DNA from: Macrostomum lignano
Taxonomy: Eukaryota
NCBI GenBank assembly: GCA_002269645.1
Contig: NIVC01002126.1
Span: 1-64,000, forward strand
Direction of reading: 5' to 3'
DNA length: 64,000 nt
Positions 3,001-45,734 of the stretch are shown here, piece after piece; the first letter of the stretch is position 1, and every line of letters starts with the position of its first letter. Under the pieces are notes generated by a model. The model saw only the letters and a list, made by a program, of their open reading frames with translations, ran no database searches and was not told where the DNA came from. Position numbers and translations under genes: made by a program.

Positions 3001-6000
3001 CCGCCCATTTCGCTAACCCCTGGCGAGATGACTAATCACACCCTCCTCTCTCTTCTCTCAGTGTACATTGGTCGATGACTAATCACACCCTCCTCTCTCT
3101 TCTCCCAGTGTTCAGTTTACATCCTGTTTTACTGTACACTGTGATGATTACATAGGATAATGTATAACACTCACTTTCTAGTGCATCGCCCGTGAGGGCA
3201 CCGGTTGTCACAGGGCTGGTTGCAGGGCACACAGGCGTCGCCGCATAGCATTCGGCACTTGTTATGCCGGCAAGCGTTGAGGCATTCCTGCTGACAGGGC
3301 GGGCAAGCTTGATGACAGGTGGAGCTGCGGCACACGTGGCCGCACACGAGCACCCGCTCGCACGGTTCTCTGCAGGGCACGTGCAGTCGGCCCTGCAATG
3401 ATTGTTGTTTGGCTGGTTTTATTCGATTTCGACTAAAATCTATTATCGATTTTTTATTGGCCTGCCAACCCAACTCCAATTATCGATTTTTTATTGGTCC
3501 ACCGCCCCAACCCCCATTATCGATCTTTTATTAGACCACCACCACAACCCCGATTGTCGATCTGTTTTTGGACCACCACCCCAACCCCAATTATCGATCT
3601 GTTATTGGCCTACCAGCCCAACCCCAATTATCGATCTGTTATTGGCCCACCACCCCAACCCTCATTATCGATCTGTTATTAGCCTGCCAACCCCACTCCA
3701 ATTTATTGATTCAAAACCCACTTCATAGAGTCACTCAGCAGACCACAAGCCTTTCCAACCCCCAACCTTGGCGCACCTGGTTGCACAAACCGCAGCGACC
3801 CTTGCACCTGTGCCCGCAAGCCAATTCAGCTCCGCACGGCTGCTGACACCTGGAAAAGAGTTCGCTATTCTCGCTGCAAGCGATGCTGGCCATGTGCTGA
3901 CAGGGCAGCCTGCGCTCCACCCGGGCGAGGCACTGGTAGCTGTGAGGCTCGCCGCACTTCCTACCGCACAAGTGGCCGCAGTCCAGCACCAGAGTGCACG
4001 GCTCCTGACAGGTGAACTTTTCTGCAGGCATCCAACATTCCACCTGGCAGTTTGAAAGATTAAAAAAAGGTCAATACTATAATTTGATTTGGAATACTCA
4101 AATGAACTGCCGCTTACTCAAAGAACTACCGCTTACTAAAGTATTTGAGAAATCGGCCTCTTGACCCACTCGGAACAATTTGTGTCCTTGAGCAAGACAC
4201 CTCACTCTGCATTGCTTCAGTTCACCCAGCTGTAAAATGGGTGCCAGCATTAGCTGGAATAATTGAGGCTGTGGCGACCACTCCTCAGTCCTTGGACTGA
4301 ACAGCCGTACGCAGCCTTCAGATGCGCCGCGCAATAGCTGCGGCTGAGCTGTCGGTTGCACATTTGGCCCATTTTGGCAGGCATAAAGATACAGCAACGC
4401 AAATGCCTCTGACACAAATTTTACCCTGATAGAAGTGTCAAAGTCTAAGACACCTGACGAGTCCCCCCAACAGCTCTCACCATCTGCGTGTGGCCGCACT
4501 TCGGGATTCTCTTCGGCTCCCGAACGGTGCACTTGCACTGCTCATGGCAGCGTTTAGGACACGGATGTCCTTTGGAGCAGGACTTCGGGCAGGGCATTTT
4601 GCAGATGACCTCCGCGTGCTCCTTGTCGGTGGGATGACAGGCTTTCTTGCACACGTGACCGCATGGCATCCGCTGTCCGCAGGGCTTGTTGCAGCCACCT
4701 TCTGGCGACTTTCGAAAGTCGGCCGGCTCGCGAATCTCGATGCTGGGCTCGTCCGGGTGGTTCTGGCAGGCCAGACGGAGCGCGTCGCCATAGCAACCGG
4801 GCTCGTGCGCCACCGTGTCGACCATGCGACGCCAAAGTCGGCTGGACTCCGCTAGCAGATCGAAATTGCCGACAGCGTACAGGCCTCTCTTGGCGCGGCT
4901 CAGTGCCACGCAGACGCGATTCTCCGTCTTCAGGAAACCGATGTCGAAGTCGTCGTTGCTGCGAACCAGCGACAGGATGATAATGTCGTTTTCTTCGCCC
5001 TGAGATTTCCGGGAAAAGGCGCGGTGACGTTACGCTTTGATTTTGGATGCTTAGAAAGAAATCTATTAAGTAACGTTTGGCTAGACACTGAAATCTACTG
5101 ATTGCGTTGACTAGACACTGAAATCTACCGATTGCGTTGACTAGACACTGAACTCTACCGATTGCGTTGACTAGACACTGAAATCTACTGATTGCGTTGA
5201 CTAGACACTGAAATCTACCGATTGTGTTGACTAGACACTGAAATCTACCGATTGTGTTGACTAGACACTGAAATCTACCGATTGCGTTGACTAGACACTG
5301 AACTCTACCGATTGCGTTGACTAGACACTGAAATCTACTGATTGCGTTGACTAGACACTGAAATCTACTGATTGCGTTGACTAGACACTGAAATCTACCG
5401 ATTGCGTTGACTAGACACTGAACTCTACCGATTGCGTTGACTAGACACTGAAATCTACTGATTGCGTTGACTAGACACTGAAATCTACCGATTGTGTTGA
5501 CTAGAGACTGAAATCTACAGATTGTGTTGACTAGACACTGAAATCTACCGATTGTGTTGACTAGACACTCAAACCTACCGATAGATACTCAAATCTACCG
5601 ATAGACGCTCAAATCTAACGATAGACACTCAAATCTAAAGATAGACACTCAAATCCCTAGACACTCAAATCCCTAGACACTCAAATCTACCGATAGAATC
5701 TACCGATAGGCACTCAAATCTACGGATAGACACTCAAATCCCTAGACACTCAAATCTACCGATAGACACTCAAATCTACCGAAAGACACTCAAATCTACC
5801 GATAGACACTCAAATCTACCGATAGACACTCAAATCCACCGATTGACACTCAAATCTACCTGGTAATTGTCGCAAACGCAGACTCGCACGCCGCGCATCA
5901 AAGGAAACTTGGGAATTAGCCGCTTGATGCTGAGCAGCTGCCCGCTGTACAGGGTGAGCACGGTGATCTGGCTCTGACTGTAGCCCTGCTTCACCAGATG

Positions 6001-9000
6001 GCACGCCAGCTGCACCACCATCTCGCTCTCAAACTGATTGCTCCTGCTGCGCATCTCTTCAACGTAGTCCTCGTGTTGTTGGTGATTCATGAAGAACAAG
6101 TTGCTGGACATGCCCATCACGTCCGGGTAGATGAGCACACTGACGTGATCCTGCAGGCCTGGATAAATGTGCTGCATCAACTTGGCAATCTCTGGCCGCA
6201 TCCGATGCTGGTAGACCAGAGTGTCATAGTGCACCCGATTGTTCACCAACCGTTCGAACAGGGACACATCGAGGTTGTACTTTTTGGCCAGCTCATACAC
6301 GGCCGGGTTCGGTTTGAGCTGCTTGTGATCGCCAATCAGCACCAGGTGCTGACAGCCCGGACTCAGCGAAGCCAGCACGTGCGATTCCAACACCTCGGCT
6401 GCCTCTTCAACGATGACAATTTTCGGTTGAACCTGGCGTAGAACTCGACGATAGCGCGCCGCTCCGGTAGTTGTCATGGCAACCAAACGGCTGGCCTCGA
6501 ACACCCGACGGTCGCACTCGTACACGGCCTCGGTGAGCTGGGCGCGCACCTGATTGTATTCCCGCTTGAGCTGCTCAATCTTCTCGCCCTGCTGCAGCAG
6601 GTACAGCTCTCGCCAGCGTCTGTACAACTGCCATCGGCTGTTCTCGTCCAGGCTCCAGATGTGGACGATCTCTCTGGCCTCCTGCTCGGGCATCGCCTCC
6701 TGGATTTGCAGCTGATGCTCAATCTGTCGGTTCTGCCTGCGCTGGTCGAACACCGTCTGGAAGCCGTCCTGGTCGACCAGGACGCAGTTGCCAATGTCCA
6801 CAGCCTTCTCGCGCTCGACCTCTGCCCTGATGCTGTGCTCCATCTCCTCTCGGCGGCCGGGCCGATCCGACAGCAAACCGTGCGACGCGTCGCGCACGTC
6901 AAATTCAAAGTCGCCCTCGCCGCGCACATTGTCGTCATTTTCGTTGTCGTCGTCCCTGTCGTCGCCCGAAACGATCCTTGCAGCGGCTTCGTAGGCCTCC
7001 TGGAAGATGAACTCCTCTATCAGGTCGATGTTCTCGTCTTCAGCTGCCAGAGCCTCGTCTAACGACAGTTCGACCTCTTCGATAGCCACAACGCCCACGC
7101 TGAGTATCCACAAGTTGAAGAGCTCGCTGAGCCGGTCCAGATCGCTGGCTTCGGCCCGGTGTCGCCTTCTTGCCGCGGATTCCATCGCCGACAGGCGAAT
7201 GTGCTCAGGCGCATGCTCCTCCAGGCTGGCGAGATGCTCCGGCAAGATGAAATCGTAAAGCAGGTGAAACTTGATCAGCCTGCGGAAGGGCAGGTCCAAA
7301 TCGATGCACATTCTGCCCAGCTTGTCTTCGATGCCGTGCAGTTTGGTGCGCAGGTCGTACACGATGCGGTCCGTGCGGCGTTTTCGGTACAGCAGGCAGC
7401 CTTCGAGTTTCGCTGACTGGCAGCGGCCGCCAACCCGTACGGCGTCCTCGGCCTGGACGAAACCGAGGATGCCTTCGAGGAACTGGTCGAGAGCGTGATT
7501 GGTGTAGCACACCAGCAGGATGGGACCGAAGTTGGGCCGACGGCTCTGGATGTTGTGCACCAGCATTTGGGCGATTCGAAGGCCCAGATGGGTTTTGCCT
7601 GTTTAAAAATAATTTGTGATAGAGATTGAAAGATACTGTGGAAAATTAAGAACAGCTATTGAACGCCTCACCTGTTCCTGGTGGCCCCTGAATAATAGCC
7701 AGCTCGTTTCTCAGGGCGGTCTTCAGCGCCGCGTACTGGCTGTCGTCTAGTTGAATAGACTCCATAGTTGGCCACTCCTGATCCTCCTGGATGTGGACCT
7801 TGCCGAGATTTTCGTGATGATGGGCTGTTTCCGGCATTATTGGCCGGAAGTCGTAGGTTATTGTGGCGTTGAACTGGAGGTACTGTGGCGGGCGAACCTA
7901 GAGATTTGTGATTATTTTAAATTGCTTGTAAATATGAAAGTTTTCAAATTTGCCGCTTTGTGCCCCAAAGAAAGCTTCCTTATCAAGATTCGTTATCCAG
8001 AGCTTCCTTATCCAGAACTTCCTTATCCAGAGCTTCCTTATCTAGAGCTTCCTTATCCAGAGCTTCATTATCAAGCTTCTTTATTAAGTTTCCTTATCCA
8101 GCTTCCTCACCAAGCTATCATTCATGTCGACAAAAGCATTTCAAAGTACACAATACCTTCGTCTGGCATTCGACCAGATATCGCGAAAACGGCACCCGCG
8201 CAGGATCCATGTCCTTGAGCGTCTCCAGCACGTGCCTGTAACTCTCAAAGAACGCTGTGGTCTCAATCATGACAAACTTATTAGAAAATGCCAGCCACTC
8301 GTCCGGCTGATTGACCCACAGCACTTTCAGGATGCCCTCATGCTCAAACTGCGCCGATCTGCGATCTTGCACGGTGGCAAAGTACAGTGTCTGGAAGGAG
8401 TCGCAGGACAGGCAGACAAGCGAGCCGTAAATCAGCCGTTTGGAGACGCTCCAGTTTGTTCTACGGAAGTTCGGCGACTCGGTGTCCAGCTGAACCGCGT
8501 AGCTGATGCCATCGTTAGAGCAGTAGAAAACGTTGCGCACCTTGACATTGTTGTAGACGCGGATGTCTGCGATGCGCCTGCGGCCAACGGGGTCCTTGCG
8601 CAGTTCGGCAAGACCGCGACGCAACGGCTCAACCAAGTCTTCGCGCATGAGGCGAAACTGAGTGTCCAGGTAGACCTCAGCAGACGGGTAGCTGCCCTTG
8701 ACTCGATTCGCTTGCAAGAACACGTTTTTAAAGTCTGCGGCCAGATCCTCGCGAGTGGGAATAATTGTTAGTTCGCGAAAATCCTGCGGCGGCTGTTGGA
8801 ATCGTTCGGCTCTTGCGGCTGCTTCCAACGCGTCCGGTGGCAGCTGCATCGACAGCTGCTTGGCCGTCATCTCTTCAAGCTTATCGGATAAATCGTCCAG
8901 CTTCTCGTCGATGAAGCTCGGACAGGTAACTAAGCTTCGCATCGCTTTCAGGTTAGCCCTGACAACCAGAATCGGCGCTTGCAGTCGATTGTAAGCCTCT

Positions 9001-9656
9001 TGGGGAGTCGTCTCAAAGCAGGCGTCCTGAATTTGGAGCACAAATCCAACAGTTTGCCATTCCTGCTCGTTTCGGCTTAACAGCAGGGGTAGCTGAGTCA
9101 GGTAGATTCTCAGACTGTCGTCAAATAGTTTGCTGTGCATGAGCTGAGTGAGCAGTTTGATTTTTAGCTGAGGAGAGAAGTCCTCTTCAACAGCCTTGGC
9201 TGACAGTTGCGCAACTGTGGCAAACAGCTGAGGTGATTTTATTTCACTGCCGATCAGATTTTCGAAACCGCTGCGCTCGTCCACCAGCCGCATGAGCAGC
9301 TCGTTTGACTTCAACTTGCCCCTGTCAACGTCCAGTTCGAGTTGTTGCAGTTCGCTTTCTCGCATCACTCGGCCCCTGTTGGAGAAGTGCTGGCCGCCGC
9401 GGCCGCTGCTGCTGATGCTGACGCCACCGGATGCGCCTCTTCCTCCGCCGCCTCGAGTTCGGCTGCCTGAAGCTCCCATCGGTGCACGGAAGTTTCCGCC
9501 AACATAGTCGCCTTCTGGACGGTCGTGGCGACTCATTGCTCCTCCGCCACGACCGCCTCTGCCGCCGCCACCTCCACGGCTCCCCCCTGCTCCGCCTCTG
9601 CCTCTGCCACCTCGTCCGCCGTCACCGCCGCCTCGGTTTTGGCGTCGGTCCGACAT
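1..9656 (-). CDS. ZNFX1: NFX1-type zinc finger-containing protein 1-like (UPF1-like SF1 RNA helicase + NF-X1 zinc fingers + RING-like module); 3' end lies beyond window start
   Basis: Exons assembled by hand, all GT-AG with consistent phases: 9656-8157, 7897-7672, 7598-5860, 4999-4481, 4043-3777, 3392-3175, 2721-2478, 1681-1359, 154-1 (5190 nt, 1730 codons, open at the window edge). Walker A QGPPGTG|KT, motif II IVEEAAEV, LIGDHKQLKP, DNYQ|GEENDII and RVCVALSRAK. Multiple CGH-xC NF-X1 fingers and the ZNFX1-typical IFFGTEDEPDAKFIRLDTCGHVFEV...CPLCKTPI segment. Confidence 0.93.
160..1315. repeat. Degenerate ~15-bp minisatellite (GACACCGGACACTAA-like) filling ZNFX1 intron 8
   Basis: Direct tandem repetition; source of the spurious VSGVL-repeat ORFs. 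Confidence 0.9.
1850..2275. mobile_element. hAT (Charlie-like) MITE in ZNFX1 intron 7 with CT-rich internal filler
   Basis: TIRs CAGGGGTCGGTAAC (1850) and GTTTGCCGACCCCTG (ends 2275). Flanking 8-mers TTCTATGG and TTCTAGGG match 7/8 and resemble the NTCTAGAN Charlie target. Confidence 0.75.
3420..3715. repeat. Imperfect ~35-bp minisatellite (TTATCGAT...CCCCAACCCCAA) in ZNFX1 intron 5
   Basis: About 8 imperfect tandem units visible. Confidence 0.75.
4166..4375 (+). mobile_element. 5'-truncated CORE-like SINE copy in ZNFX1 intron 4
   Basis: TTGTGTCCTTGAGCAAGACAC...CTTCAGTTCACCCAGCTGTAAAATGGGTGCC and the following GCAATAGCTGCGGCTGAGCTGTCGGTTGCACAT closely match the SINE at 34662-34925; no tRNA head. 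Confidence 0.75.
5088..5858. repeat. 30-bp minisatellite (CTAGACACTGAAATCTACCGATTGCGTTGA) grading into a 20-bp unit (GATAGACACTCAAATCTACC) in ZNFX1 intron 3
   Basis: About 16 near-perfect 30-bp copies followed by shorter related units up to the splice donor. Confidence 0.92.
7985..8100. repeat. 15-bp tandem repeat (TTCCTTATCCAGAGC) in ZNFX1 intron 1
   Basis: Direct repetition, about 6 copies. Confidence 0.8.
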
Positions 9657-16655: not shown

Positions 16656-17267
16656 ATCGTTGTTTCTGTTCCTTAACGATATTTTCCTTGTGTCTTCTGG
16701 CTGTTTTTTTCTAAAACCAGCAAGTGGAGCTCGGGTATTTAGGCTTCAGATAAGAGACTTTCGCAGCAAAGAAATTTTAGACAGATAAGAAAATTACAAG
16801 CCACACTGCAGGGGTTGGGGTTGCCAGCTGCAGTAACAATCTGGAAAGGCAGAAGATATAATTGCAGTATTAAGTTTCGCACACAAAATTTGGGGTGTTT
16901 CTCCGATGTCAATATTACCCAACCATGGAATTATGCTGGATTTGTTCAGCCAAAAGGCTTTCAGCCTAAAGTAATACATTAAAGTTCTATGAGTACGAGT
17001 AGTTTCTCTGCTTTTTAATGTCACTAATTCCGTGTGTACGTATTCTCTGTAGTGTGTATGCTTAAGTGTTATACACCCTCATATGTACACCCTTGAATAT
17101 GTACACCTGCCAGTGTACATATGCATGCACACCCTTAGCCCTCTATACAACAAAGGACCCCGAAAAGTTACCGTTGTATCAGCGGTAACTTTTAGTGGTC
17201 TTTGTCTACATCCTTGACTTCGTTACAAACCCTAGCCTCTGTAGAAACTAGCTTTTGTACACAATTT

Positions 17268-17630
17268 AGCCCTCTGTACACATAGCCCTCTGTACACCTA
17301 GCCCTCTGTACACATAGCCCTCTGTACACCTAGCCCTCTGCACACCTAGCCCTCTGTACACCTAGCCCTCTGTACACATAGCCCTCTGTACACCTAGCCC
17401 TCTGCACACCTAGCCCTCTGTACACCTAGCCCTCTGTACACCTAGCCCTCTGTACACCTAGCCCTCTGTACACCTAGCCCTCTGTACACCTAGCCCTCTG
17501 TACACCTAGCCCTTTGTACACCTAGCCCTCTGTACACCTAGCCCTTTGTACACCTAGCCCTCTGTACACCTAGCCCTCTGTACACCTAGCCCCCTGTACA
17601 CCTAGCCCTCTGTACACCTAGCCCTCTGTA
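17268..17630. repeat. 16-bp minisatellite GCCCTCTGTACACCTA (array 1)
   Basis: About 22 tandem copies; same unit as 28618-29360. Confidence 0.92.
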
Positions 17631-17975
17631 ACCAACGCGGTCGCAACCAGTTTTAATTCACTTTGTCCGCTGGTCTGTCTCGTTCATAAATTTAGAGCCA
17701 AACGATCATGCTTCTAGCTAAATTAGGTATATTAACTGGCTCTCTTATTTCTTCAAGAGTGGAAGCGTAGAACAAGCCTTCACTTCTTTCTCGTGCTACG
17801 TGGAGCCGCAACATATGGAGCATGCAGCATAAAGGCTACAACTTTACTTAGCACCCCCGTGTATATTTGTAGAAGCACAAAATCTTCTTCGATATCAAGC
17901 CTAATAAAATAAGAGTTTATTAACAGTCACACTACAAATAGCACTAAGACTATCAAGTGTCTGGCTGCATTAAAA

Positions 17976-19942
17976 ATGAGAATCACCAATGTCAATATCT
18001 ACCGGGCTGATCTGCCACTGCTAGACGAAAGCTACAACTTGTCCGATGGGAAATCCGTTCGAGTACTCGACGCCACTGTAGTCGAATTGGTCACCGATTC
18101 CGGTATTCGAGGCTACGGCGAGTGCTGCCCGTTGGGACCGAACTACCTGCCGAGCTATGCTAACGGGCTAAGGACCGGATTAGCGGAACTGCGACCGAAT
18201 TTGATTGGCTTGGACCCCTTGGACATTGAAGTGGTCAACAGGCAGATGGACTACAACTTGAAGGTGATGACGTGCACTTTAACCTTTTTCCTATCCTAGG
18301 GAACATTCCAATCCACTGTCTTATGTACATTCCAATCCACTGTCTTATGTACGTTCCAATCCACTGTCTTATGTACATTCCGATCCCCTGTCTATGGAAT
18401 TCCAATCCACTCTCTATGGACATTCCAATCCACTGTATATGAACATTCTAATCCCTTGTTTATGGACATTCCAATCCCCTGTCTTATGTACATTCCAATC
18501 CCCTGTCTATGGACATTCCAATCCCTTGCCTATGGACATCCTAATCCACTGTCTATGAACATTTCTGTCGCCTAGCTGTCTATTGGCCAAATCAACTTTG
18601 ATTCAGAGCACCCGCCTAGTTATGTAAAGTACATTTCAAATCACAGGGCCATCCCTACGTAAAATCGCCGGTCGACATGGCGCTGTGGGACATCTTGGGA
18701 AAGTTCACCGGACTGCCAGTGTGCACCCTGCTCGGGCGGTCGATTCGGAGACTACGTGCCGCTGTATCGGCCAATCAGTCAGGGCAGCCCGGAGGAGATG
18801 GTGGAGAGAGTGCGGCACTATCGCGCCACCAGAGGCTACCGGCGCTTCCAACTGAAGGTTGGCGGCAGTGACGAGATGCTGGACGCTGCTCGGATTCGCG
18901 CGGTTCGATCCGCACTTACGGATGGCGAACTACTGGTGGCGGATGCCAACACGGGTACAAGAGTTCGATTGCAATTCAGGATGTTGGTGCAGGCAATAAA
19001 ACCCTGGGGACTGGGGAAGTGTCACTAATTCAGGGTGCTGGGACAGGCAAAAAAATAGGGAAGGGTCACTAATTGGGGTCTGGGTGCAGGAAATAAAACC
19101 CTGGGACTGGGGAAGTGTCACAAATTCAGGGTGTTGGTGCAGGCAATAAATCCCTGCGGAAGGGTCACTAATTGCGAGAGTCAATTCAGGCAATAAAACC
19201 CCGAGGAAGGGCCGCTAGTTGGGGTGTTGGTGCAGGCCATAAAACCCTGCGTAAGGGTCACTAATTGCGAGAGTCAATTCAGGCAATAAAACCCCGAGGA
19301 AGGGCCGCTAGTTGGGGTGTTGGTGTAGGCGATAAAACCCTGGGGGAAGTGTCACTACCGTATTTAGGACTGTTCTGCAGGCATTAAAGTCTTCAAGTGA
19401 AAGTAATTAAACTTTTCTAATAAAAATCTTACCTAGGATGGCTCCCGCACCAAGCGGTTCGAGTGTGCCAGTCTGTCTCCGACCAGGATGTGTACATCGA
19501 ACAGCCCTGCGCCACTATGGATCAGTGCCGACAGGTGCGCGAGGCGAGCGCCTGCGGCCTGCCGTTTATCTTAGACGAGAGCATCGACTCGCTGGATAGC
19601 TTGCTGTCAATGCGCGGAGCGGCAGACTGCATCAATATCAAAATTAGCAAAGTTGGCGGCCTCACAAAAGCCAGGCAGATGAGAGACCTGGCTGTTCACC
19701 TGGGCCTAGCCATGGTGCTGGAGGACTGCTGGGGCAGCGACTTCGCCACGGCAGCCATTGCTCATTTGGCGCACAGCACGCCAGAGAAGCACAGGCTGAT
19801 GAGCGCTGACTTCAATACCTACCATCCGGTGAGAACGGGTCATCTGGCCAAGCCGCTAACCAATGACAGGGGCGGCATGGTGGCGCCGGAGGGACCGGGC
19901 CTTGGTGTGGAGCCGAACTTTGCCGCTCTGATGAAAGTCTGA
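17976..19942 (+). CDS. Mandelate racemase/muconate lactonizing enzyme family protein, cis-3-hydroxy-L-proline dehydratase / hydroxyproline-betaine epimerase-like; 3 exons with one +1 frameshift in exon 2
   Basis: Exons 17976-18263, 18647-18954, 19437-19942 with GT-AG introns; 366 aa after removing one G at 18734-18736. Motifs GYGECCPLGPNYLPSY, GHPYVKSPVDMALWDILGK, FQLKVGG, metal ligands in DANTG / EQP / DES, INIKISKVGGL, EDCWG, DFNTY and GPGLGV. Matches, from recall, bacterial cis-3-hydroxy-L-proline dehydratases. Confidence 0.85.
18300..18560. repeat. ~22-24-bp minisatellite (ACATTCCAATCCACTGTCTTATGT) in dehydratase intron 1
   Basis: About 11 imperfect tandem units. Confidence 0.8.
18985..19355. 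repeat. Imperfect tandem repeat (GGTGCAGGCAATAAAACCCTG...GTCACTAAT) in dehydratase intron 2
   Basis: Repeated blocks, including an ~80-bp near-exact duplication. Confidence 0.7.
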
Positions 19943-20199
19943 ACTGCTGCTGATGAAAGCTGACGTGAAGTAGGCTTCAGTCAAATTGTAAAATCTGTTG
20001 TTAAAAATTAAAAAAATACAGAGCTATAGAGATCGACATTGTTTTTGTTTAACCTATAGGGTGCAGAATGAATCAACCGATGAATCAACCAGTCAATCCT
20101 CAACGATCAATAATTATGCTAATAAAACAAATTAACACACCAATTATTTTGTTAAATAGTCACTCGACCAATAAAATTTATCAAGCAATCATTCATCAA

Positions 20200-20800
<601 letters not shown>

Positions 20801-21565
20801 CAAACAGCTGATCAGTGGATAAATCAAGTTGATATTCCGATACATCAATCAATGAATCAATCAATGGTCAATGCAGTGAGCCTCAGACCTTCTTTGTCTC
20901 TATAGATTTGGTCAAATTGCGCTAATTGCTGATTGAATCTGGAGACTCGTCGACTCGAAAAGTCATATAAATTGTATGAAAAAGATTTTTGAACTTTGGA
21001 ACTGGTAAAATTTCCACCTGCTGATCAGCAAGTCTCGCGTCTTCGACAATCAAACAAACTGCAGATCGTCGGAAACCTCACTTTGCAGCACCCAGCTTCA
21101 CGGCGCCCCTCATCACTAGCAGTCCATGATGAGATTTTAAGATTGAGCATACTCGTAGTTAGTTACTACAGTGCAGTTGTGGAGGCTTTGGTGTGGAGTA
21201 CAGTCAGTACTCATAATTACATTACGGCGAACGTTCCATAGTAAGATTATTTACATTCTCAATTGAACAATACAAATATCGATTTGTTGCAGGTAGTTCT
21301 GCTCCTCTTGCGACAGCTTGGCGTAAAGAAACGGAACGTAAAATTGCTAGACTTTGATGCTTCAGTGAGTCATTTAACGTTCTGTAAGATGGTTTGCTTA
21401 GTTGATTGCGTGTGCGCACGTTCACTAGCTCTTATGTACATTTGCTCGCTGTACAATGATAATATATAAGTGAATGCCTTGGCGCCCTGGGCAGCCAAGA
21501 GTCGGTCTACGCCTTAAGCCAATTTCTCGTTTTCGCTTGTTCTTACATTGGTGGCAGCGGCGGCT

Positions 21566-22408
21566 ATGACTGAAAATGAAGGCAGTGCAGAGAGCCCTAC
21601 AGTGGCGGTGACTCAGCCCCAAGCTAGTTTTGTCAACATGTTTTTGCGGCCGCCTCAATACCAGCATGGACAAGACTTTGAACTTTGGCTGGCGCGATTC
21701 AACAATTTCGCATCATCTCTTCCTGTGGATCAGCGCAAGAATGCTCTGCTGTCATTCTTCGACGACAAATCATATCAAGCGGCCAGCAATTTGGATGCTG
21801 CCCTGTCCTACGACGACTTTGAGAAGGCTCTGAAAAATCGATTTCGGCCATCAACATCATCTGCTGAGCTGCAGGCGCAGTTCTTCAATCTGACTCAAAA
21901 GGACGGTCAGTCGGTTGCAGACTATTCCGATGCCCTGATCGTTGCGGCAAAGCGCGCGTTACCGAGTCTGATGGAGACGAAAGCAGGTGCCGAGCAGGAG
22001 ACGTCGGTGACAGCGAAGGACGAGCTTCTCAAAGGTCGGTTTCTATCCGGATTGAGGGACCCAGCTGTGCGAATGCAGACGCAGATGCAGCCAAAGGCGA
22101 CATTCGCTGATACAGTTGAAACAGCGCGATTCGTGGAATCGATACAGTCGCAAGGAGGCACTGCTACGGCTCTAGCTGCTGAGGTTCCCGAAGCCTTTGC
22201 AGTCGGAATTCAACGGTCCCTGAAGGAGCTGTCCAACAAGCTCAGCCGCTGGGAGTCAAAGGACCAGGATCATCGTCAGAGCGGCGACAGACGCAGAGTT
22301 GTGACATGCTGGAAGTGCGGTAAGCCGGGCCATGTTCAAAGATTTTGCACTCAGAAGTCGGGAAACTTCGATGGAGCGGCGACCGCCGGGGTGCCGTTCC
22401 GCAAGTGA
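21566..22408 (+). CDS. gag: Gypsy Gag with CCHC zinc knuckle
   Basis: Intact ORF from ATG 21566; CWKCGKPGHVQRFC knuckle; retrotransposon capsid-like region (FNLTQKDGQSVADY...FLSGL). Confidence 0.9.
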   Translation: MTENEGSAESPTVAVTQPQASFVNMFLRPPQYQHGQDFELWLARFNNFASSLPVDQRKNALLSFFDDKSYQAASNLDAALSYDDFEKALKNRFRPSTSSAELQAQFFNLTQKDGQSVADYSDALIVAAKRALPSLMETKAGAEQETSVTAKDELLKGRFLSGLRDPAVRMQTQMQPKATFADTVETARFVESIQSQGGTATALAAEVPEAFAVGIQRSLKELSNKLSRWESKDQDHRQSGDRRRVVTCWKCGKPGHVQRFCTQKSGNFDGAATAGVPFRK

Positions 22409-25400
22409 GAATCCCGGCGCAACCAGTCGTAGAGGTGTCCTGCTCAGCCACTGGTGCCAACATGCTGGTAAACTGTCGCATCCTGCCAATGTGTGTCCCT
22501 GCCAGCTGTCTAGTTGACACTGGGTGTTCCCAGTCTTTGATGTCAAGTTCCCTGTTTCGCAAGCTGAATGAGAGGCTCCTGCCTTTGACGACTCCGGTGC
22601 AGTTGAAGCTGGCAGACGGTAACTATTTGGCTGTCTGTGGTTGGCAGGAAGTGCAGCTAAGTTTCAGTGTGGCAACGGTTCGACAAAGAGTTTTAGTTGT
22701 CGACAATCTGGCCAAGGATTTTTGCTGGGTGCAGATTTCCTGGCAAACTGTGGCTGCGTCATCGACTGCAATCGCCAAACGCTCACTGTGTGCGGTCAGC
22801 AAGTAAAAATGGAGTCATCGGCAGCAAGTAGCTGTGTATTCGCCGTTGAGGTAGCAGACAGGACAACCGTGCCCGCTGGTCACGAAATCGTCTTCCCAGC
22901 GAGATTGACAAGTGAGTCAGCTGCAGCTGTTGATGGTGAGTGCGGCATCTTTGAGCCTGACAATTCGAAGGACATCTCCACGGTCATATGGGGAGCGCGC
23001 AGCTTCTCGGTGTTGCGAGGAGGACTCATCGCCGTTCACTATGTCAATACGGACACCAAGCCGCATACATTTTACCCCGGAACAAGACTGGGGACTTTTG
23101 AGCCGATGTCAGATGGTGCCGATGCAGAGTCGTCAATGCAAGTTGAGACAGTGAAAGGTCAAATCGCCGAGTATTCACCAAATGTGCACATTGATGAGAA
23201 AAATCTTACAGCCAATCAAGTTCAGTGTGTCAAAGATCTTCTGCATCAGTACCAGGATGTGTTCTCGAAAATTCCAAACGACCTGGGCTGCACTTAACTC
23301 CTTGACCACAAAGTTGACACCGGGTCGGCGAAACCTATCAGAGTGCCTCCTCGTCGATTGTCGCCGCCGAACCAGCGAGCTGTGTCAGAGATGGTCGAGC
23401 AGATGGTGAGAGACGACATCGTAGAGCCTTCGAATTCTCCGTGGTCGAGCCCGGTCATTCTGGTGAAGAAGAAGGACGGCAGTTTGCGCTTCGTGAACGA
23501 CTTCAGACTGCTCAACTCCGTGACCGTCAAAGACAGTCATTCACTGCCTCACACCGGCGATCTGATCGATGCTCTCCCAGGATCCACAATGTTCTCAACG
23601 CTCGACTTCACTAGCGGGTACACCCAGGTGATGCTGGACTCAGAGAGTCGCGCAAAAACAGCATTTCCTGCGCCACAGGGATTATTCCAGTACAAGAGAC
23701 TACCGCAAGGTGTGTGCAATGGTCCTGCCATGTTTTCAAGGCTGATGGAACTCGTTCTGAAGGGCCTCCGATGGGAAGTGTGCCTGTCATTTCTTGACGA
23801 CGTTGTCATCTTTTCGAAAGGATTCGAGGAGCATCTGCGGCGTCTTGAGCTTGTGTTGCAGAAATTCAGAACCGCTAACCTGAAGTTGAAGCCAACCAAG
23901 TGCCACCTGTGCTATCAGGAAATCTCATTTCTTGGCTTTTGAATCTCAAAAGATGGCGTGACCACTGACCCGGACAAGGTGAAAGCAGTGCAGGAGTGGC
24001 CAACGCCCGAAGATCGTTCAGAAGTGCGACAATTCCTGGGGTTATGTGGCTACTATCGTCATTTCGTTAAAAACTACAGTGAGATTGCTGAACCGCTGTA
24101 CAAGCTAACGCAAAAGGACGTGACCTTCAGCTGGACTCTCGAATGCTCAGCAGCATTTAATCGCCTAAAGCAGTGCCTTACTTCCAGCCCAGTCCTCATC
24201 ATGCCGACATTCGCAGAAGACGCTGAGTTCGTGCTAGATACCGATGCCTCTGGCGTGGCCATCTCCGGAGTTCTTCAAGAGCGCCGTGGTGGCAGGACGC
24301 AGGTGGTGGCGTACGGCAGTCGCATTCTGTCCAAAGCAGAGAGAAATTACTGCACAACGAGGCGTGAGCTGCTGGCAATTGTGCACTTCGTCGGTCACTA
24401 TCGCAGCTACTTGTTAGGAAAAAGATTCACACTACGTACTGATCACGCCTCGCTGATATATCTTCTGCGCTTTCGAGATCCCGATGGTCAGCTGGCACGG
24501 TGGCTGGAAAAGCTAAGCGAATTCGACTACCAGACGGAGTATCGCAAGGGCGAGAAACATGGAAATGCAGACGCACTTAGTCGGCGACCGTGTCGAAAAG
24601 GACCTTGCCTGTGCAGTGGCTCTGCGCTCGCTGTCGAGTTCAATGACGACAGCGCGATTCGACGAGCACAGGCAGAGGATCGGTGCATGCAGAAGCTGGC
24701 GAACTGCTTACGAGATGGGCAACCACCGGATAAGGCAGATACGGACGGCTGGAGCAATCGGCAGCGGCAACTGCTGTCCGAGTTTAAGCGGCTGACACTG
24801 GTGAACGGACTGCTGTGCCGCCGATGGGAATCCGAAGATGGCAGCGCCTTTTGTCAGCAGCTGCTGGTGCCAGAGAGTCTACAGCGCGATTTTTTTGTCG
24901 AAGCTCATGCTGGAACGAGCGGCAGCCACTGCGGACCGCAGAAGACCATTGAAAAGATCAGGGCGCGACTCTACTGGCCTGGAATGACTGTGACTGACTG
25001 GTGTGCTGCGTGCCTCGAATGCGCGACACTGAAAGATTCTGGCCAGCACAGGCGGGCACCTCTACAGAGCATGGCGGTCGGCAGCGTTGGCCAGCGACTG
25101 GAAATGGACTTCATGGTGGGCCTGCCGAGGACCGATCGTGGAAATTCAGTCATCCTGGTAGTCATCGACACCTTCAGCAAGTGGACTGAGGTCTTTCCAC
25201 TGCCGTCTCAAGACGCTGAGACCACAGCCCGGACGTTTGTCAACGAGTGGGTGGCTCGCTTTGGAGTCCCGCAGTCGGTACACACCGACCAGGGTCAGAA
25301 CTGGGAGTCGCAGCTGTTTCAAGAGACGATGCGGCTGCTGCTGAAAATCGACAAGACTCGGACGACAGGCTACCACCCTGAAGGAGACGGCGGTTGCGAA

Positions 25401-26210
25401 AGGATGAACCGGACACTGGTGCAGCTGCTGCGAGCATGGGTGAACGAGAATCAGCGAGACTGGGATCTTCATCTGCAGATTGCACTGATGGGCTACCGCA
25501 CTTCAGTCCACAAGTCGACTGGTCAGACACCTTCGGCGATGCATTTCGGCCGGGAACTGCGACTAACACTGGACTTGGCGTACGGAGGTCTGGCGCTGGA
25601 TACGAGGGGCACTAGATAAGTTTTTAGCTGCGGTCAAACCGTTTATTCAAATTAGGCCATATTTTCTGAGCATATTGAATAAGAAGTTTTATCATGGTTG
25701 TGAATGGGTGGCCAAGCTGCGGAGCCGGCTGCAGACATCGCACGAGAGGGCGCGACAAAACTTGGAGGCAGCGCAACTGCACCAGAAGGCAGCGTACGAC
25801 AGGAGGTGCCACGGCGAGGCATTCAGCGAGAACGACCTGGTCTGGCTGCACAATCCGGCGCTGAAGCGAGGCGAGAGCCGAAAATTTCATCGATGGTGGA
25901 CTGGGCCATGGCGCGTTAAAAAGCAGATCTCGGAGTCACCTACCGCATTCAGCACGAGGCCAATGCACGACGGCGAAGGGTGGTGCATTTCAATCGCCTG
26001 AAGCCATGCAACACGGCCAGTCCAGCTGCAGCACCTCAATTGCAATCAGCGGCGCAACTGCACAATCCTGACGAGGACGACCTGAGATTTGACGGCGCCC
26101 CGGTCGGCGCCCCTGCTGATGTTCCAGAGCATCCAGAACAGCCTGTATTGCGCCAAAGTGAGAGGGCCCGTGCCCCGCCAGAATTTTTTGGTGAAGTGTA
26201 TACTCATTGA
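22360..26210 (+). pseudogene. pol: Gypsy pol (protease, RT, RNase H, integrase) with lesions
   Basis: PR VDTGC; RT LPQG...FLDD; RNase H LDTDAS...ERNYCTTRRELLA; IN zinc finger plus D,D(35)E and GPW. In-frame stops at 23295-23297 and 23940-23942, frameshifts near 22720 and ~25935, and an AT-rich insert at ~25612-25687. Confidence 0.92.
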
Positions 26211-28617: not shown

Positions 28618-29360
28618 CCTAGCCCTCGGTACATCTAGCCCTTTGTACATCTAGCCCTCTGTACACCTAGCCCTCTGTACACCTAGCCCTCTGTACACCT
28701 AGCCCTCTGTACACCTAGCCCTCTGTACACCTAGCCCTCTGTACACCTAGCCCTCTGTACACCTAGCCCTCTGTACACCTAGCCCTCTGTACACCTAGCC
28801 CTCTGTACACCTAGCCCTCTGTACACCTAGCCCTCTGTACACCTAGCCCTCTGTACACCTAGCCCTCTGTACACCTAGCCCTCTGTACACCTAGCCCTCT
28901 GTACACCTAGCCCTCTGTACACCTAGCCCTCTGTACACCTAGCCCTCTGTACACCTAGCCCTCTGTACACCTAGCCCTCTGTACACCTAGCCCTCTGTAC
29001 ACCTAGCCCTCTGTACACCTAGCCCTCTGTACACCTAGCCCTCTGTACACCTAGCCCTCTGTACACCTAGCCCTCTGTACACCTAGCCCTCTGTACACCT
29101 AGCCCTCTGTACACCTATAGCCATCTGTACATCTAGCCCTCTGTACACCTAGCCCTCTGTACACCTAGCCCTCTGTACACCTAGCCCTCTGTACACCTAG
29201 CCCTCTGTACACCTAGCCCTCTGTACACCTAGCCCTCTGTACACCTAGCCCTCTGTACACCTAGCCCTCTGTACACCTATAGCCATCTGTACACCTAGCC
29301 CTCTGTACACCTAGCCCTCTGTACACCTAGCCCTCTGTACACCTAGCCCTCTGTACACCA
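28618..29360. repeat. 16-bp minisatellite GCCCTCTGTACACCTA (array 2)
   Basis: About 45 nearly perfect copies. Confidence 0.95.
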
Positions 29361-29689
29361 TAACCTCTCTGTACACCAATAGCCATAGCAAATGTGTTGG
29401 TAACTTTAAGAAAATTAATTTTGACCTTTAGAGATTGTAAATTTCCACCTGTTGATCAGCAAGTCTTGCGTCTTCGACAATCAAGCCAACTGATAATGAA
29501 AAAAAACTCATTTTGCAACCCCCAGAGTGACGCACGACCCCTCATCATCAGTTTAAAATCCTCATTAGTTAATTCCCAAATTTTCCGAGCAACAACATTA
29601 TGCGCTGGTGTCCTACTAACAGTAGCATCGGTATACTTAAGGTACGCGAAATACGTCATGATTCTCATCTAAAATAGTTCTATTGTAAC

Positions 29690-32830: not shown

Positions 32831-33219
32831 TTTCTTTAAATTTTTTAGTTTATTGACGCAGACAATCAAAATTTTATTCTGGATGTCAATTCTAAGAAAG
32901 ACAAAAAGCATTGCGGTTTAAACGCTCCTATTGACAAGAAGCAGTGCTTTGTTTCTGGGAAAGACAGTCAGTCCACTATCCATCAAGCTAGCTGTTTATG
33001 CTGGTAATTAATCATCGAAGCCAAACCTGTTAGTCACAAGATTGTTGAAAGATTTAAAGGCAGTTTTTTTAGTGCAAACTCAGTCGTAAACATTAATGCT
33101 GACTCTGTTAAATATCGCCATTGGCCATTAGAGCCACAATAAGTGACAGATGTTTTGACAGGTAAAAAACATTTTTAAGGTTACCTGGGTTTCTGTCTCA
33201 ACACGTTAAGATGAAGATG

Positions 33220-34525
33220 TAGTCAGGGATCTGTTCTAACATGTTGTCAGGGATCTGTTCAAGCATGTTGTCAGGGATCTGTTCAAGCATGTTGTTAGGG
33301 ATCTGTTCAAGCATGTTGTCAGGGATCTGTTCAAGCATGTTGTCAGGGATCTGTACCAACATGTTGTCAGGGATCTGTTCAAACATGTTGTTAGGGATCT
33401 GTTCAAGCATGTTGTCAGGGATCTGTACCAACATGTTGTCAGGGATCTGTTCAAGCATGTTGTTAGGGATCTGTTCAAGCATGTTGTTAGGGATCTGTTC
33501 AAGCATGTTGTTAGGGATCTGTTCAAGCATGTTGTCAGGGATCTGTTCCAACATGTTGTCAGGGATCTGTTCCAACATGTTGTTAGGGATCTGTTCAAGC
33601 ATGTTGTCAGGGATCTGTTCAAGCATGTTGTCAGGGATCTGTTCAAGCATGTTGTTAGGGATCTGTTCAAGCATGTTGTTAGGGATCTGTTCAAGCATGT
33701 TGTTAGGGATCTGTTCAAGCATGTTGTCAGGGATCTGTACCAACATGTTGTCAGGGATCTGTTCAAGCATGTTGTTAGGGATCTGTTCAAGCATGTTGTC
33801 AGGGATCTGTACCAACATGTTGTCAGGGATCTGTTCAAGCATGTTGTTAGGGATCTGTTCAAGCATGTTGTTAGGGATCTGTTCAAGCATGTTGTTAGGG
33901 ATCTGTTCAAGCATGTTGTCAGGGATCTGTTCCAACATGTTGTCAGGGATCTGTTCCAACATGTTGTTAGGGATCTGTTCAAGCATGTTGTCAGGGATCT
34001 GTTCAAGCATGTTGTCAGGGATCTGTTCAAGCATGTTGTTAGGGATCTGTTCAAGCATGTTGTTAGGGATCTGTTCAAGCATGTTGTTAGGGATCTGTTC
34101 AAGCATGTTGTCAGGGATCTGTTCAAGCATGTTGTTAGGGATCTGTTCCAACATGTTTACAGGGATCTGATCCAGCATGTTGTCAGGGATCTGTTCCAAC
34201 ATGTTGTCAAGAATCTGTTCCGACATGTTGTCAGGGATCTGTTCCAACATGTCGTCAGGGATCTGTTCCAACATGTCGTCATTAATCTGTTCCAACATGT
34301 CGTCGGGGATCTGCTCCAACATGTTGTCAGGAATCTGTTCCAACATGTCGTCAGGGATCTGTTCCAACATGTTGTCAGGAATCTGTTCCAACATGTCGTC
34401 AGGGATCTGTTCCAACATGTTGTCAGGAATTTGTTCTAACATGTCGTCAGGGATCTGTTCCAACATGTTGTCAGGAATTTGTTCTAACATGTTGTCAGGG
34501 ATCTGTTCCAAGATGTTGTCAGGGA
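33220..34525. repeat. 24-bp minisatellite (ATCTGTTCAAGCATGTTGTTAGGG)
   Basis: About 54 copies; source of the QIPDNMLE-repeat ORFs. Confidence 0.95.
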
Positions 34526-34661
34526 AGAGAAATGAAGACCAACAGTGGAAATATAAAATAGTCGATGATTTACAAAATGCTAAAGCAGGCAGGAGTTCTG
34601 AGCACGCATGGTGCAACGCCTTCGTCGACAGCGAGGCAATTCTGCCCATCCGCTGACTCCT

Positions 34662-43708: not shown

Positions 43709-44332
43709 TGAAGCCGCACTAAATTTCAGTTTGGGCAGGGCATAGCAAAACATCCAGACTCTCGGGTTCCTGTAACTCTTGAAACGCTACTCAATAGTGA
43801 CTGTCATATGGGTAATAACCGAAATGAGCTCGCCAGCCTTCACTTCTCTAGACCGGCCCATGCAGTCAAGTCCCTCCCAAATATCCGGTGAGCGCTGTCT
43901 CAGTCAGAAATCACGAGAAAGCTGATTTTAAACGAAAAACACTACAATTATAACGATTTTAAGGCCGCCTTACCTAGCGCCCTGAACGTGTTGTTGCTAT
44001 GCTGATAAAAATATATGATTTTTTAATTTCCTGCTGCAGTTTCAGGAGCGAATGTTATTCATCTTCAACCGAGTGGACCAAGCATGCCTGAGTGCATTTG
44101 TTTAAAATTTGCCGCATCGTAAAAATGCTTAATTTCAATTATTAAATAGATTCCAAACCCAACTAGTGTTAGCTTAAATCATCCGCACTCGAGGCAATTC
44201 ACTTAAGGACGACTGATAAACACATGAAGCTCCGCTACCTACGCTGCAGCTACGAGCTACACTAGATCGCTGCCTCTACCTCTCCTTCTCGTCAGTTCAA
44301 GCCTCTGAAGTCTACCAGCAAGTTTTTTCATC

Positions 44333-45264: not shown

Positions 45265-45734
45265 ACTCAAGGACCACTAGAAGTTACCCCGAAATATACC
45301 CTGAAATAATTCCTTATAATATGTAGCGTTTATAAATTTGAAGCGTTAAATCCTCTTAGGTTTAGTAAAAAAAATTATCAGGCGGCAGGCTGTGTTGAAG
45401 GTACCATTTGCTGCATTCCTCACCCATCAGCCCCCCCCCCCTACCAGCCCTCACGTCGCAATGATGAAAGCGCCATATGCGGACGCAGAATCCAAATGCA
45501 TTTCACACTTAACAGTGTACTCGTAATATTGACCAGAAATGGGTATTAAGGGTTTAAGGGACACAGATGGTTGGCGATAGGGCGAACTGCAAATGGAAGA
45601 CGATCCGACAGTTAAAAGGTTCATTTTAAAAAAAAGTTGTTTCCGCCTGTGGCCTCGGATTTTATGGTGGTTGGGTAAAAACCCTAGAATCTTAACCGAA
45701 ATATTCCTATGATTGGGAATCTGTTAACACCGAT

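What the first reader, a model, noticed from the sequence alone, without database searches (positions are those of the whole stretch)
17976..19942. Bacterial-type cis-3-hydroxyproline dehydratase-like enzyme with spliceosomal introns: candidate domesticated horizontal transfer
Seen: a 3-exon gene with GT-AG introns (383 and 482 bp, both containing host-style minisatellites) embedded among animal genes. The 366-aa product keeps the MR/MLE catalytic and metal-ligand positions (LKV, DAN, EQP, DE, KISK). Known: this subgroup (cis-3-hydroxy-L-proline dehydratase, proline-betaine/hydroxyproline-betaine epimerases) is characterised in bacteria, notably marine Proteobacteria, and I recall strong end-to-end resemblance to those sequences. 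Inference: a bacterium-to-animal transfer followed by intron gain, possibly allowing catabolism of hydroxyprolines or algal proline-betaine osmolytes. Related genes may already occur patchily in other marine invertebrates.
Basis: partly seen in the sequence, partly recalled or inferred. Interest (0 to 1): 0.8.

Follow-up and report, generated by a model that had tools for sequence, protein, structure and literature searches.

The report
Bacterial-type hydroxyproline dehydratase gene in flatworm
This is a real, intron-bearing flatworm (Macrostomum lignano) gene for a bacterial-type cis-3-hydroxyproline dehydratase, but it belongs to an old gene lineage shared with annelids, a brachiopod and jellyfish rather than being a recent flatworm-specific transfer, and this copy has a one-base frameshift.

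Summary
The spliced CDS is 1102 nt, though. A surplus G at 18734-18736 shifts the frame in exon 2, so the 366-aa product exists only after deleting one base.

The corrected protein is an enolase-superfamily (MLE subgroup) enzyme. It is 55% identical to PDB 4MGG, and all catalytic and metal residues are conserved. [quoted passage not shown]

The organism is Macrostomum lignano. The flanks hold a ZNFX1-like helicase, a gypsy retroelement and a GPCR, and the gene's codon usage matches theirs, so contamination is excluded.

Orthologs occur in Owenia, Capitella and Lingula (with introns) and in the jellyfish Sanderia and relatives (intronless). Macrostomum intron 2 has the same position and phase as an intron in both annelids. 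The eukaryote-context sequences form one NJ group (bootstrap 62%) and share signature residues.

A recent flatworm-specific transfer is therefore not supported. The gene looks inherited from at least the spiralian ancestor. An older bacterial origin (64-71% identity to planctomycete enzymes) is plausible but unproven. Interest is moderate.

The parts
17976..18263 (+). Exon 1 (288 nt, codons 1-96, ATG start; most of the N-terminal capping domain, MR_MLE_N)
   Evidence: tblastn of the corrected protein is 100% over aa 1-96. Aligns from Met1 with 4MGG and all homologs.
18264..18646 (+). Intron 1: 383 bp, GT..AG, phase 0, after Lys96 (DYNLK|GHPYVK). Contains a 23-bp x 11 minisatellite at 18303-18563. 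Not shared with Lingula, Owenia or Capitella.
   Evidence: Intron maps of the other animals.
18647..18954 (+). Exon 2 (308 nt as written). Encodes GHPYVKSPVDMALWDILGK...FQLK166VGG...VAD195ANTG. Contains the frame-breaking extra base.
   Evidence: two tblastn pieces in different frames meet at 18735/18736.
18734..18736 (+). GGG run holding one surplus base (+1 frameshift). Removing one G restores LLGGRFGDY. Either a homopolymer assembly error or a real disabling mutation of this copy.
   Evidence: 1102 nt against 1101 nt. P0002 skirts the site; P0001 reads LLGGRFGDY. Not resolved.
18955..19436 (+). Intron 2: 482 bp, GT..AG, phase 1, inside the Gly199 codon of DANTG|W. Contains a 47/93-bp minisatellite at 19011-19357. 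Same position and phase as an intron in Owenia fusiformis and Capitella teleta.
19437..19942 (+). Exon 3 (506 nt, to TGA at 19940-19942). Most of the TIM-barrel domain, with E220, D245, K267/K270 and D295.

Best explanation
[quoted passage not shown] The lineage is seen in the Spiralia (flatworm, annelids, brachiopod) and in cnidarians.

Inferred mechanism, by homology:
- A Mg2+ ion held by D195, E220 and D245 stabilises the enolate formed when one of the two active-site lysines (K166 after strand 2, K267 after strand 6) removes the alpha-proton of the imino acid.
- Loss of the 3-hydroxyl then gives delta1-pyrroline-2-carboxylate. A ketimine (Pyr2C) reductase can reduce this to L-proline.
- 2-epimerisation is a side reaction in the characterised bacterial enzyme.

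The flatworm inherited the gene from at least the spiralian ancestor, as the shared intron shows. Its ultimate origin is most likely an ancient transfer from bacteria into an early animal lineage, followed by many losses.

The copy in this window carries a single extra G in exon 2. As written it cannot make the full-length enzyme. Because only one base is wrong and the conserved positions are otherwise kept, I favour an assembly error or a very recent disabling of one of several duplicate copies.

Shown: gene structure, family assignment, residue conservation, host integration, homologs in other animals, shared intron positions.
Inferred: substrate, expression, timing and direction of the transfer.
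For: Family:
- Pfam MR_MLE_N plus MR_MLE_C.
- The best solved structure is 4MGG, E 2e-117, 54.6% identity end to end. I recall 4MGG as the Labrenzia aggregata enzyme; no tool output here gives its source organism.
- K166, D195, E220, D245, K267 and D295 align with 4MGG K165, D193, E218, D241, K265 and D293.
- 130 of 143 near-invariant columns of the non-clan (putatively bacterial) sequences are kept, similar to Capitella.
- The activity of the Labrenzia enzyme LhpJ is described in PMC5144071, citing Zhang et al. 2015.

Host gene:
- Two GT-AG introns with minisatellites.
- Neighbours are a ZNFX1-like helicase, a gypsy retroelement and a rhodopsin-type GPCR.
- CDS GC3 is 0.71, against 0.63-0.78 for the neighbours.
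- M. lignano UniProt entries are 99% identical, or identical except around the frameshift.

Old animal lineage:
- Orthologs are present in Lingula, Owenia and Capitella (all with introns) and in Sanderia malayensis.
- Intron maps: position 49 phase 0 and position 277/280 phase 0 are shared by Lingula, Owenia and Capitella. Position 115 phase 0 is shared by Owenia and Capitella. The phase-1 intron in DANTG|W is shared by Owenia, Capitella and Macrostomum.
- All 19 eukaryote-context sequences form one NJ clan among 222 sequences, bootstrap 62/100 on a subsample.
- Signature residues defined without Macrostomum: it has 5 of 9, the other 203 sequences at most 3.
- Cnidarian copies sit next to AGK both in the Sanderia annotation and in Mb-size eukaryote-like contigs.
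Against: - The spliced ORF is broken as written, and the other annotated M. lignano copy is broken elsewhere. No transcript or independent read evidence could be obtained.
- Both Macrostomum copies fall below the NF043002 equivalog cutoff (465 and 454 against 500), while every other animal ortholog tested passes (560-594). The flatworm enzyme is therefore divergent and may have changed specificity.
- The window copy has Leu at the otherwise near-invariant Trp22.
- Sequence support for placing Macrostomum with the other animals is modest. NJ bootstrap is 62%, the branch is long, and profile HMMs built from the non-clan sequences and from animals score it equally (531 against 522 bits).
- The cnidarian genes lack introns and are not placed as sister to the spiralians in the NJ tree. 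Separate transfers, or animal-to-animal transfer, are not excluded.
- No ML phylogeny and no systematic survey of other eukaryotes could be run.
- No source of free cis-3-hydroxyproline in animals is known to me.
Confidence: 0.7

Rival explanations
1. Recent, Macrostomum-lineage-specific transfer from a marine bacterium, followed by gain of two introns.
For: - About 60% identity to many bacterial and metagenomic proteins, as high as to other animals.
- HMMs built from the non-clan sequences score it as well as animal HMMs do.
- Intron 1 is unique to Macrostomum.
Against: - Intron 2 has the same position and phase as in Owenia and Capitella. The chance of coincidence is roughly 2 x 8 / 1100, about 1-2% under uniform insertion.
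- 5 of 9 animal signature residues, against at most 3 in the 203 non-clan sequences.
- NJ places it with the other animals.
- Codon usage is fully host-like.
Confidence: 0.07
2. Ancient eukaryotic gene inherited vertically from before animals, with very many losses and no transfer from bacteria into animals.
For: - The animal sequences form one group, spanning Cnidaria and Bilateria.
- A more distant relative is among the PDB hits: 2PS2, E 1e-71. I recall its source as Aspergillus oryzae; no tool output confirms this.
Against: - Animal proteins are 64-71% identical to Planctomycetota and other bacterial enzymes, as close as animal phyla are to each other.
- The branch beneath the animal clan is very short (0.02).
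- Among 240 listed top hits, the only named eukaryotes are five marine invertebrates.
Confidence: 0.13
3. This locus is a decaying pseudogene, one of several duplicates in a recently duplicated genome, and has no function. The frameshift is real.
For: - +1 frameshift at 18734-18736.
- The same frame problem underlies UniProt model P0002.
- Trp22 to Leu at a near-invariant site in this copy only.
- The second copy also has a frame break.
Against: - There is only one lesion: no stop codons in the three exons once corrected, and splice sites are intact.
- 130 of 143 invariant sites are kept.
- The lesion lies in a G-run, the typical place for long-read consensus errors (my own knowledge).
- The two copies have different single-base lesions, as expected for random consensus errors.
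Confidence: 0.3
4. Bacterial contamination or a mis-assembled chimera.
For: High similarity to bacterial enzymes.
Against: - The coding sequence is interrupted by two GT-AG introns carrying minisatellites of the kind that fill the whole window.
- Host-like GC3.
- Animal genes and a retroelement lie on both sides.
- A second near-identical copy is annotated in the same species.
Confidence: 0.01

Closest known systems
[quoted passage not shown]
   Same: Same two-domain fold and length. 54.6% identity end to end to 4MGG. Same metal ligands and lysine pair. NF043002 is by far the best-scoring family model. Activity is described in PMC5144071.
   Different: Encoded in an animal genome with two spliceosomal introns. 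Scores slightly under the equivalog cutoff (465 against 500). Divergent C-terminal 40 residues. No hydroxyproline gene cluster around it. Activity untested. This copy is frameshifted.
Uncharacterised animal orthologs: Lingula anatina LOC106158194, Owenia fusiformis (unnamed product), Capitella teleta CAPTEDRAFT_228474, Sanderia malayensis EP00794_P014318
   Same: Same family; all pass NF043002 at 573-594 bits. Shared signature residues. One intron shared with Owenia and Capitella.
   Different: 58-60% identity only, on a long branch. Macrostomum kept one ancestral intron, lacks those at positions 49, 115 and 277, and has its own at 96. The cnidarian genes are intronless and lie next to AGK.
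4-hydroxyproline betaine 2-epimerase (HpbD) and proline betaine racemase. I recall PDB 2PMQ, 4H2H and 4E8G as these enzymes; labels them only as MR/MLE proteins.
   Same: Same MLE-subgroup scaffold and two-lysine chemistry. NCBI names some planctomycete relatives this way.
   Different: Much weaker match: E 8e-52 to 4e-59, against 2e-117 for 4MGG.
[quoted passage not shown]
   Same: Same predicted product, delta1-pyrroline-2-carboxylate, feeding a reductase that yields proline (PMC5144071; L3HYPDH from my own knowledge).
   Different: Unrelated folds (aconitase superfamily; proline racemase-like) and, for L3HYPDH, the other stereoisomer.

Membership tests
Enolase superfamily, MLE subgroup | N-terminal capping domain plus C-terminal modified TIM barrel (Pfam MR_MLE_N plus MR_MLE_C) | tested here: met
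   PF02746 at 53 bits and PF13378 at 146 bits, both above gathering cutoffs.
Enolase superfamily, MLE subgroup | Three carboxylate metal ligands after strands 3, 4 and 5, and catalytic lysines after strands 2 and 6 | tested here: met
   D195, E220, D245, K166 and K267 align with D193, E218, D241, K165 and K265 of 4MGG. The roles are assigned from general knowledge of the subgroup, not from the c3LHypD paper, which was not held.
[quoted passage not shown] | Whole-protein score at or above the curated cutoff (500 bits) | tested here: not met
   465 bits for the corrected window protein and 454 for P0001. The other eight eukaryote-context proteins tested score 560-594. Strictly, the flatworm protein is 'c3LHypD-like'.
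[quoted passage not shown] | Dehydration or 2-epimerisation of cis-3-hydroxy-L-proline | not testable with these tools
   Needs an enzyme assay.
Functional protein-coding gene | Uninterrupted reading frame after splicing | tested here: not met
   The spliced length is 1102 nt, with a +1 shift at 18734-18736. Whether this is sequence error or mutation is unresolved.
Functional protein-coding gene | Spliced transcripts | not testable with these tools
   No M. lignano transcript-derived protein is in the searched collections.
Horizontally acquired gene in an animal | Physically integrated in the host chromosome with host features | tested here: met
   Introns, minisatellites, host-like GC3 and animal neighbours.
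Horizontally acquired gene in an animal | Animal clade nested within donor (bacterial) diversity in a supported, rooted tree | tested here: inconclusive
   Only an NJ tree was possible. The eukaryote clan has 62% bootstrap and sits among unnamed metagenomic sequences on a short stem, with no outgroup rooting.
Horizontally acquired gene in an animal | Absence from most other eukaryotes and animals | tested here: inconclusive
   The named eukaryotes among the listed hits are only Macrostomum, Lingula, Owenia, Capitella and Sanderia. Lists are capped at 120 and most entries are unnamed.
4-hydroxyproline betaine 2-epimerase / proline betaine racemase | Closest similarity to characterised HpbD enzymes | tested here: not met
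   The chains I take to be HpbD (2PMQ, 4H2H, 4E8G) score E 8e-52 to 4e-59, far behind 4MGG at 2e-117.

The most novel reading that the evidence does not exclude
A single bacterial cis-3-hydroxyproline dehydratase gene entered the animal lineage before cnidarians and bilaterians split. It has been kept for over half a billion years in jellyfish and several spiralian phyla (gaining introns in the spiralian stem) and lost elsewhere. These marine animals would then have a bacterial-type route from 3-hydroxyproline isomers to proline, one that vertebrates and ecdysozoans lack.
Probability: 0.4. Interest if true: 0.55.

Novelty: new member of a known kind. Interest (0 to 1): 0.4.

Why it matters
If the enzyme is active, some marine invertebrates carry a bacterial-type enolase-superfamily hydroxyproline dehydratase that no one has characterised in animals. 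My literature searches found no paper on it.

It would be a clean example of an old, domesticated prokaryote-derived metabolic gene. Shared intron positions date it to at least the spiralian ancestor.

It would also raise a concrete biochemical question: where does cis-3-hydroxyproline, or the real substrate, come from in these animals?

For genome annotation there is a practical point. The current M. lignano models for both copies are distorted by single-base frame errors.

Tried and rejected
- **Resolving the frameshift.** I looked up the exon ORFs, the corrected protein and a hypothetical intact exon-2 ORF by exact sequence. None is in the collections. There is no second copy in the window to compare with.
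- **Profile test of affinity.** HMMs built from the non-clan sequences, spiralians, cnidarians and all animals score the Macrostomum protein almost equally (502-531 bits). The test does not discriminate.
- **ML phylogeny.** No ML tree program is installed, so only Kimura-distance NJ with bootstrap was possible.
- **Naming the sources of unnamed sequences.** Searching accession strings in the literature gave nothing. The taxon of P0032, P0076, P0137 and of the ENA contigs L003-L005 remains unknown beyond 'eukaryote-like'. The AGK neighbour search gave only unnamed hits plus Sanderia.
- **Bacterial gene context.** In Maioricimonas rarisocia the gene has no hydroxyproline cluster around it, so this adds nothing on function.
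- **The primary c3LHypD paper** (Zhang et al. 2015) is not held. Residue roles rest on subgroup knowledge and on the alignment to 4MGG.
- **The P0002-style gene model**, which uses an alternative acceptor at about 18720, is rejected as a real isoform. It deletes the conserved GHPYVKSPxDMAxWDILGK segment merely to regain the frame.
- **Not run, judged unnecessary.** Structure prediction, given E 2e-117 to a solved structure. The representative-library search, because it returns no names.
Full report
**1. What is in the sequence**

Reading 17700-20300 and translating all frames gives a three-exon gene on the + strand.

| Part | Coordinates | Length | Notes |
|---|---|---|---|
| Exon 1 | 17976-18263 | 288 nt | ATG start |
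| Intron 1 | 18264-18646 | 383 bp | GTGATG...CACAG, phase 0, after Lys96 |
| Exon 2 | 18647-18954 | 308 nt | holds the frame break |
| Intron 2 | 18955-19436 | 482 bp | GTACAA...CCTAG, phase 1, inside a Gly codon |
| Exon 3 | 19437-19942 | 506 nt | TGA stop |

- Each intron holds a minisatellite: 18303-18563 (23 bp x 11) and 19011-19357 (47/93-bp units).
- These units occur nowhere else in the window. The whole 64 kb is nevertheless packed with similar minisatellites.

The exons sum to 1102 nt, which is not a multiple of three.

- Inside exon 2 the reading frame changes at CTGCTC-GGG-CGGTCG (GGG = 18734-18736).
- As written, the spliced ORF stops after about 170 codons.
- Deleting one G restores ...LLGGRFGDYVPLY... 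and a 366-aa protein.

**2. What the protein is**

- The corrected protein has the MR_MLE_N and MR_MLE_C domains.
[quoted passage not shown] It scores 465 bits, just under the cutoff of 500; the next family scores 125 bits.
- Against solved structures the best match is 4MGG: E 2e-117, aligned end to end, 54.6% identity. I recall 4MGG as the Labrenzia aggregata enzyme; the tool output does not give its source organism.
- The chains I recall as hydroxyproline-betaine epimerases (2PMQ, 4H2H, 4E8G) are far weaker, at E 8e-52 to 4e-59.
- The subgroup's functional residues are all present. K166, D195, E220, D245, K267 and D295 match 4MGG K165, D193, E218, D241, K265 and D293.
- The protein keeps 130 of the 143 columns that are near-invariant in the 203 non-clan (putatively bacterial) homologs. 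This is about the same as the Capitella ortholog.
- The characterised Labrenzia enzyme (LhpJ) irreversibly dehydrates cis-3-hydroxy-L-proline to delta1-pyrroline-2-carboxylate. It also reversibly epimerises the substrate at C2 (PMC5144071, citing Zhang et al. 2015).

**3. Whose genome, and is it a host gene?**

- The two best database hits are Macrostomum lignano UniProt entries.
- A0A1I8G9Z1 (P0002, 342 aa) matches the window protein residue for residue. The exception is that its model jumps from exon 1 to an acceptor downstream of the frameshift, dropping 30 conserved residues. The same extra G was evidently in the assembly the annotators used.
- A0A1I8GLQ4 (P0001) is a second copy. It differs by four substitutions, reads LLGGRFGDY normally, and has its own frame break near the C-terminus.
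- The neighbours in the window are a ZNFX1-type helicase (5830-9656, minus strand), a Ty3/gypsy retroelement (21548-25619) and a rhodopsin/Srw-type GPCR (36071-37087, minus strand).
- The CDS has GC 0.585 and GC3 0.71, like those neighbours (GC3 0.61-0.78). The introns have GC 0.42-0.48.
- Bacterial contamination is excluded.

**4. Relatives in other animals**

Full-length homologs with 58-60% identity to the flatworm protein are annotated in three spiralians:

- Lingula anatina (brachiopod)
- Owenia fusiformis (annelid)
- Capitella teleta (annelid)

An EukProt entry proved to be from the scyphozoan jellyfish Sanderia malayensis. It belongs to a tight group of eleven sequences (73-81% identity, NJ bootstrap 100).

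- I checked three loci of this group. There the gene is intronless, lies in AT-rich contigs of 1.8-4.1 Mb, and sits next to an intron-split acylglycerol-kinase (AGK) gene.
- In Sanderia, AGK is four gene models away.
- The synteny therefore points to cnidarian chromosomal genes.

Three further members look eukaryotic:

- P0076 and P0137 are mRNA-like contigs.
- P0032 is an intronless gene in sparse DNA near a reverse-transcriptase ORF.

All eight of these eukaryote-context proteins that I tested pass the NF043002 cutoff, at 560-594 bits.

**5. Intron positions**

I rebuilt exact exon models from the genomic loci.

| Species | Intron positions (codon / phase) |
|---|---|
| Lingula | 49/0, 84/1, 163/0, 277/0, 327/0 |
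| Owenia | 49/0, 115/0, 199/1, 280/0 |
| Capitella | 10/0, 49/0, 115/0, 196/1, 277/0 |
| Macrostomum | 96/0, 199/1 |

- In alignment terms the 49/0 and 277(280)/0 introns are shared by Lingula, Owenia and Capitella.
- The 115/0 intron is shared by the two annelids.
- The phase-1 intron that splits the Gly codon of the metal-site motif D-A-N-T-G|W is shared by Owenia, Capitella and Macrostomum (its intron 2).
- With two Macrostomum introns and eight distinct positions in the other genes, among about 1100 possible sites, a chance coincidence is about 1-2%.
- This is the strongest single argument that the flatworm gene descends from an intron-bearing gene already present in the spiralian ancestor.

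**6. Sequence-based grouping**

- In an NJ tree of 222 sequences (367 columns, Kimura distances), all 19 eukaryote-context sequences form one clan.
- Bootstrap for that clan is 62/100 on a subsample of 89 sequences. The Macrostomum pair sits on a long branch at its base.
- I defined signature columns without Macrostomum: a residue shared by most spiralians and most cnidarians and present in at most 15% of the other 203 sequences. There are nine such columns.
- Macrostomum has the animal residue at five of them (S60, Y93, A257, S295, K312). The other 203 sequences average 0.58 and never exceed 3.
- One test did not discriminate. HMMs built from the non-clan sequences and from animals score the flatworm protein about equally, at 531 against 522 bits.

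**7. Where did the animal lineage come from?**

- Animal proteins are 64-71% identical to enzymes of Planctomycetota (Maioricimonas, Stieleria, Rhodopirellula, Novipirellula) and other bacteria. That is as close as Lingula is to Owenia or Sanderia, at 69%.
- The stem under the eukaryote clan is short (0.02) and its NJ neighbours are unnamed metagenomic sequences.
- This pattern, together with the few named eukaryotes among the listed hits, fits an old bacterium-to-animal transfer followed by many losses.
- I could not root the tree, run ML, or survey eukaryotes systematically.
- Vertical descent from an older eukaryotic gene therefore remains possible. So do separate transfers into cnidarians (intronless) and spiralians (with introns).

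**8. The frameshift**

- The lesion is a single base in a G-run, and it is the only defect. The splice sites are intact, and there are no stops in the three exons once it is corrected.
- The other copy in the species carries a different single-base defect.
- This is what residual long-read consensus errors look like (my own knowledge). It is also what very young pseudogenes in a recently duplicated genome look like.
- The window copy also has Leu at the near-invariant Trp22, where the other copy keeps Trp.
- I could not retrieve any independent M. lignano DNA or transcript, so this stays open.

**9. Verdict**

- The family assignment is right at the 'c3LHypD-like' level. Strict equivalog membership is narrowly missed.
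- The evolutionary reading needs changing. This is not a flatworm-specific domestication. It is one member of an uncharacterised, patchily retained animal lineage (Cnidaria plus Spiralia) of a bacterial-type enzyme.
- I found no literature on this lineage, though the proteins are already in public databases as uncharacterised entries.
- Interest is moderate.

Noticed in passing
window 5830-9656 (- strand): Two long ORFs carry AAA_11/AAA_12 helicase domains and a ZNFX1 domain. They are probably exons of one ZNFX1-like (NFX1-type zinc-finger helicase) gene upstream of the finding.
   Followed up: partly
window 21548-25619 (+ strand): Ty3/gypsy-type LTR retroelement 1.6 kb downstream of the gene. 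Gag/zinc-knuckle, RT, RNase H and integrase lie on several separate ORFs, which suggests frame breaks or decay.
   Followed up: partly
window 36071-37087 (- strand): Single-ORF rhodopsin-family (Srw-like) GPCR of 338 aa.
   Followed up: no
window 38482-43709: A 5.2-kb satellite of a 36-bp unit (about 146 copies, 179-bp higher-order period, 94% matches). More than 25 other minisatellite arrays are spread over the 64 kb. Several long 'ORFs' (33198-34649, 45684-46343, 58860-60329, 20068-20763) are just translated repeats.
   Followed up: partly
window 17267-17630 and 28618-29377: The same 16-bp minisatellite unit (TAGCCCTCTGTACACC, permuted) forms arrays on both sides of the gene plus retroelement block.
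   Followed up: no
L003 2719-4662, L004 54-1593, L005 1-1377; Sanderia P0230: In cnidarian-type contigs the intronless dehydratase gene lies next to an acylglycerol-kinase gene (DAGK_cat plus AGK_C). In Sanderia malayensis the two are four gene models apart. This is conserved synteny, even though the AGK proteins are only about 43% identical across the group.
   Followed up: partly
L002 14770-22896 (Owenia fusiformis): The Owenia ortholog is followed by a CMAS-type (cyclopropane-fatty-acyl-phospholipid-synthase-like) methyltransferase gene, another family better known from bacteria. It might be a second old acquisition.
   Followed up: no
P0003 (ENA contig of 3868 bp): A 449-aa homolog with an internal duplication of the roughly 85-residue segment VCPLGPFYLPAYA...LPVCELL. 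It scored high in both searches. Its origin and meaning were not examined.
   Followed up: no
window 18039-18041 (codon 22): The window copy has Leu22 where the other M. lignano copy and at least 97% of the non-clan (putatively bacterial) homologs have Trp. This may hint at relaxed constraint on this copy.
   Followed up: partly
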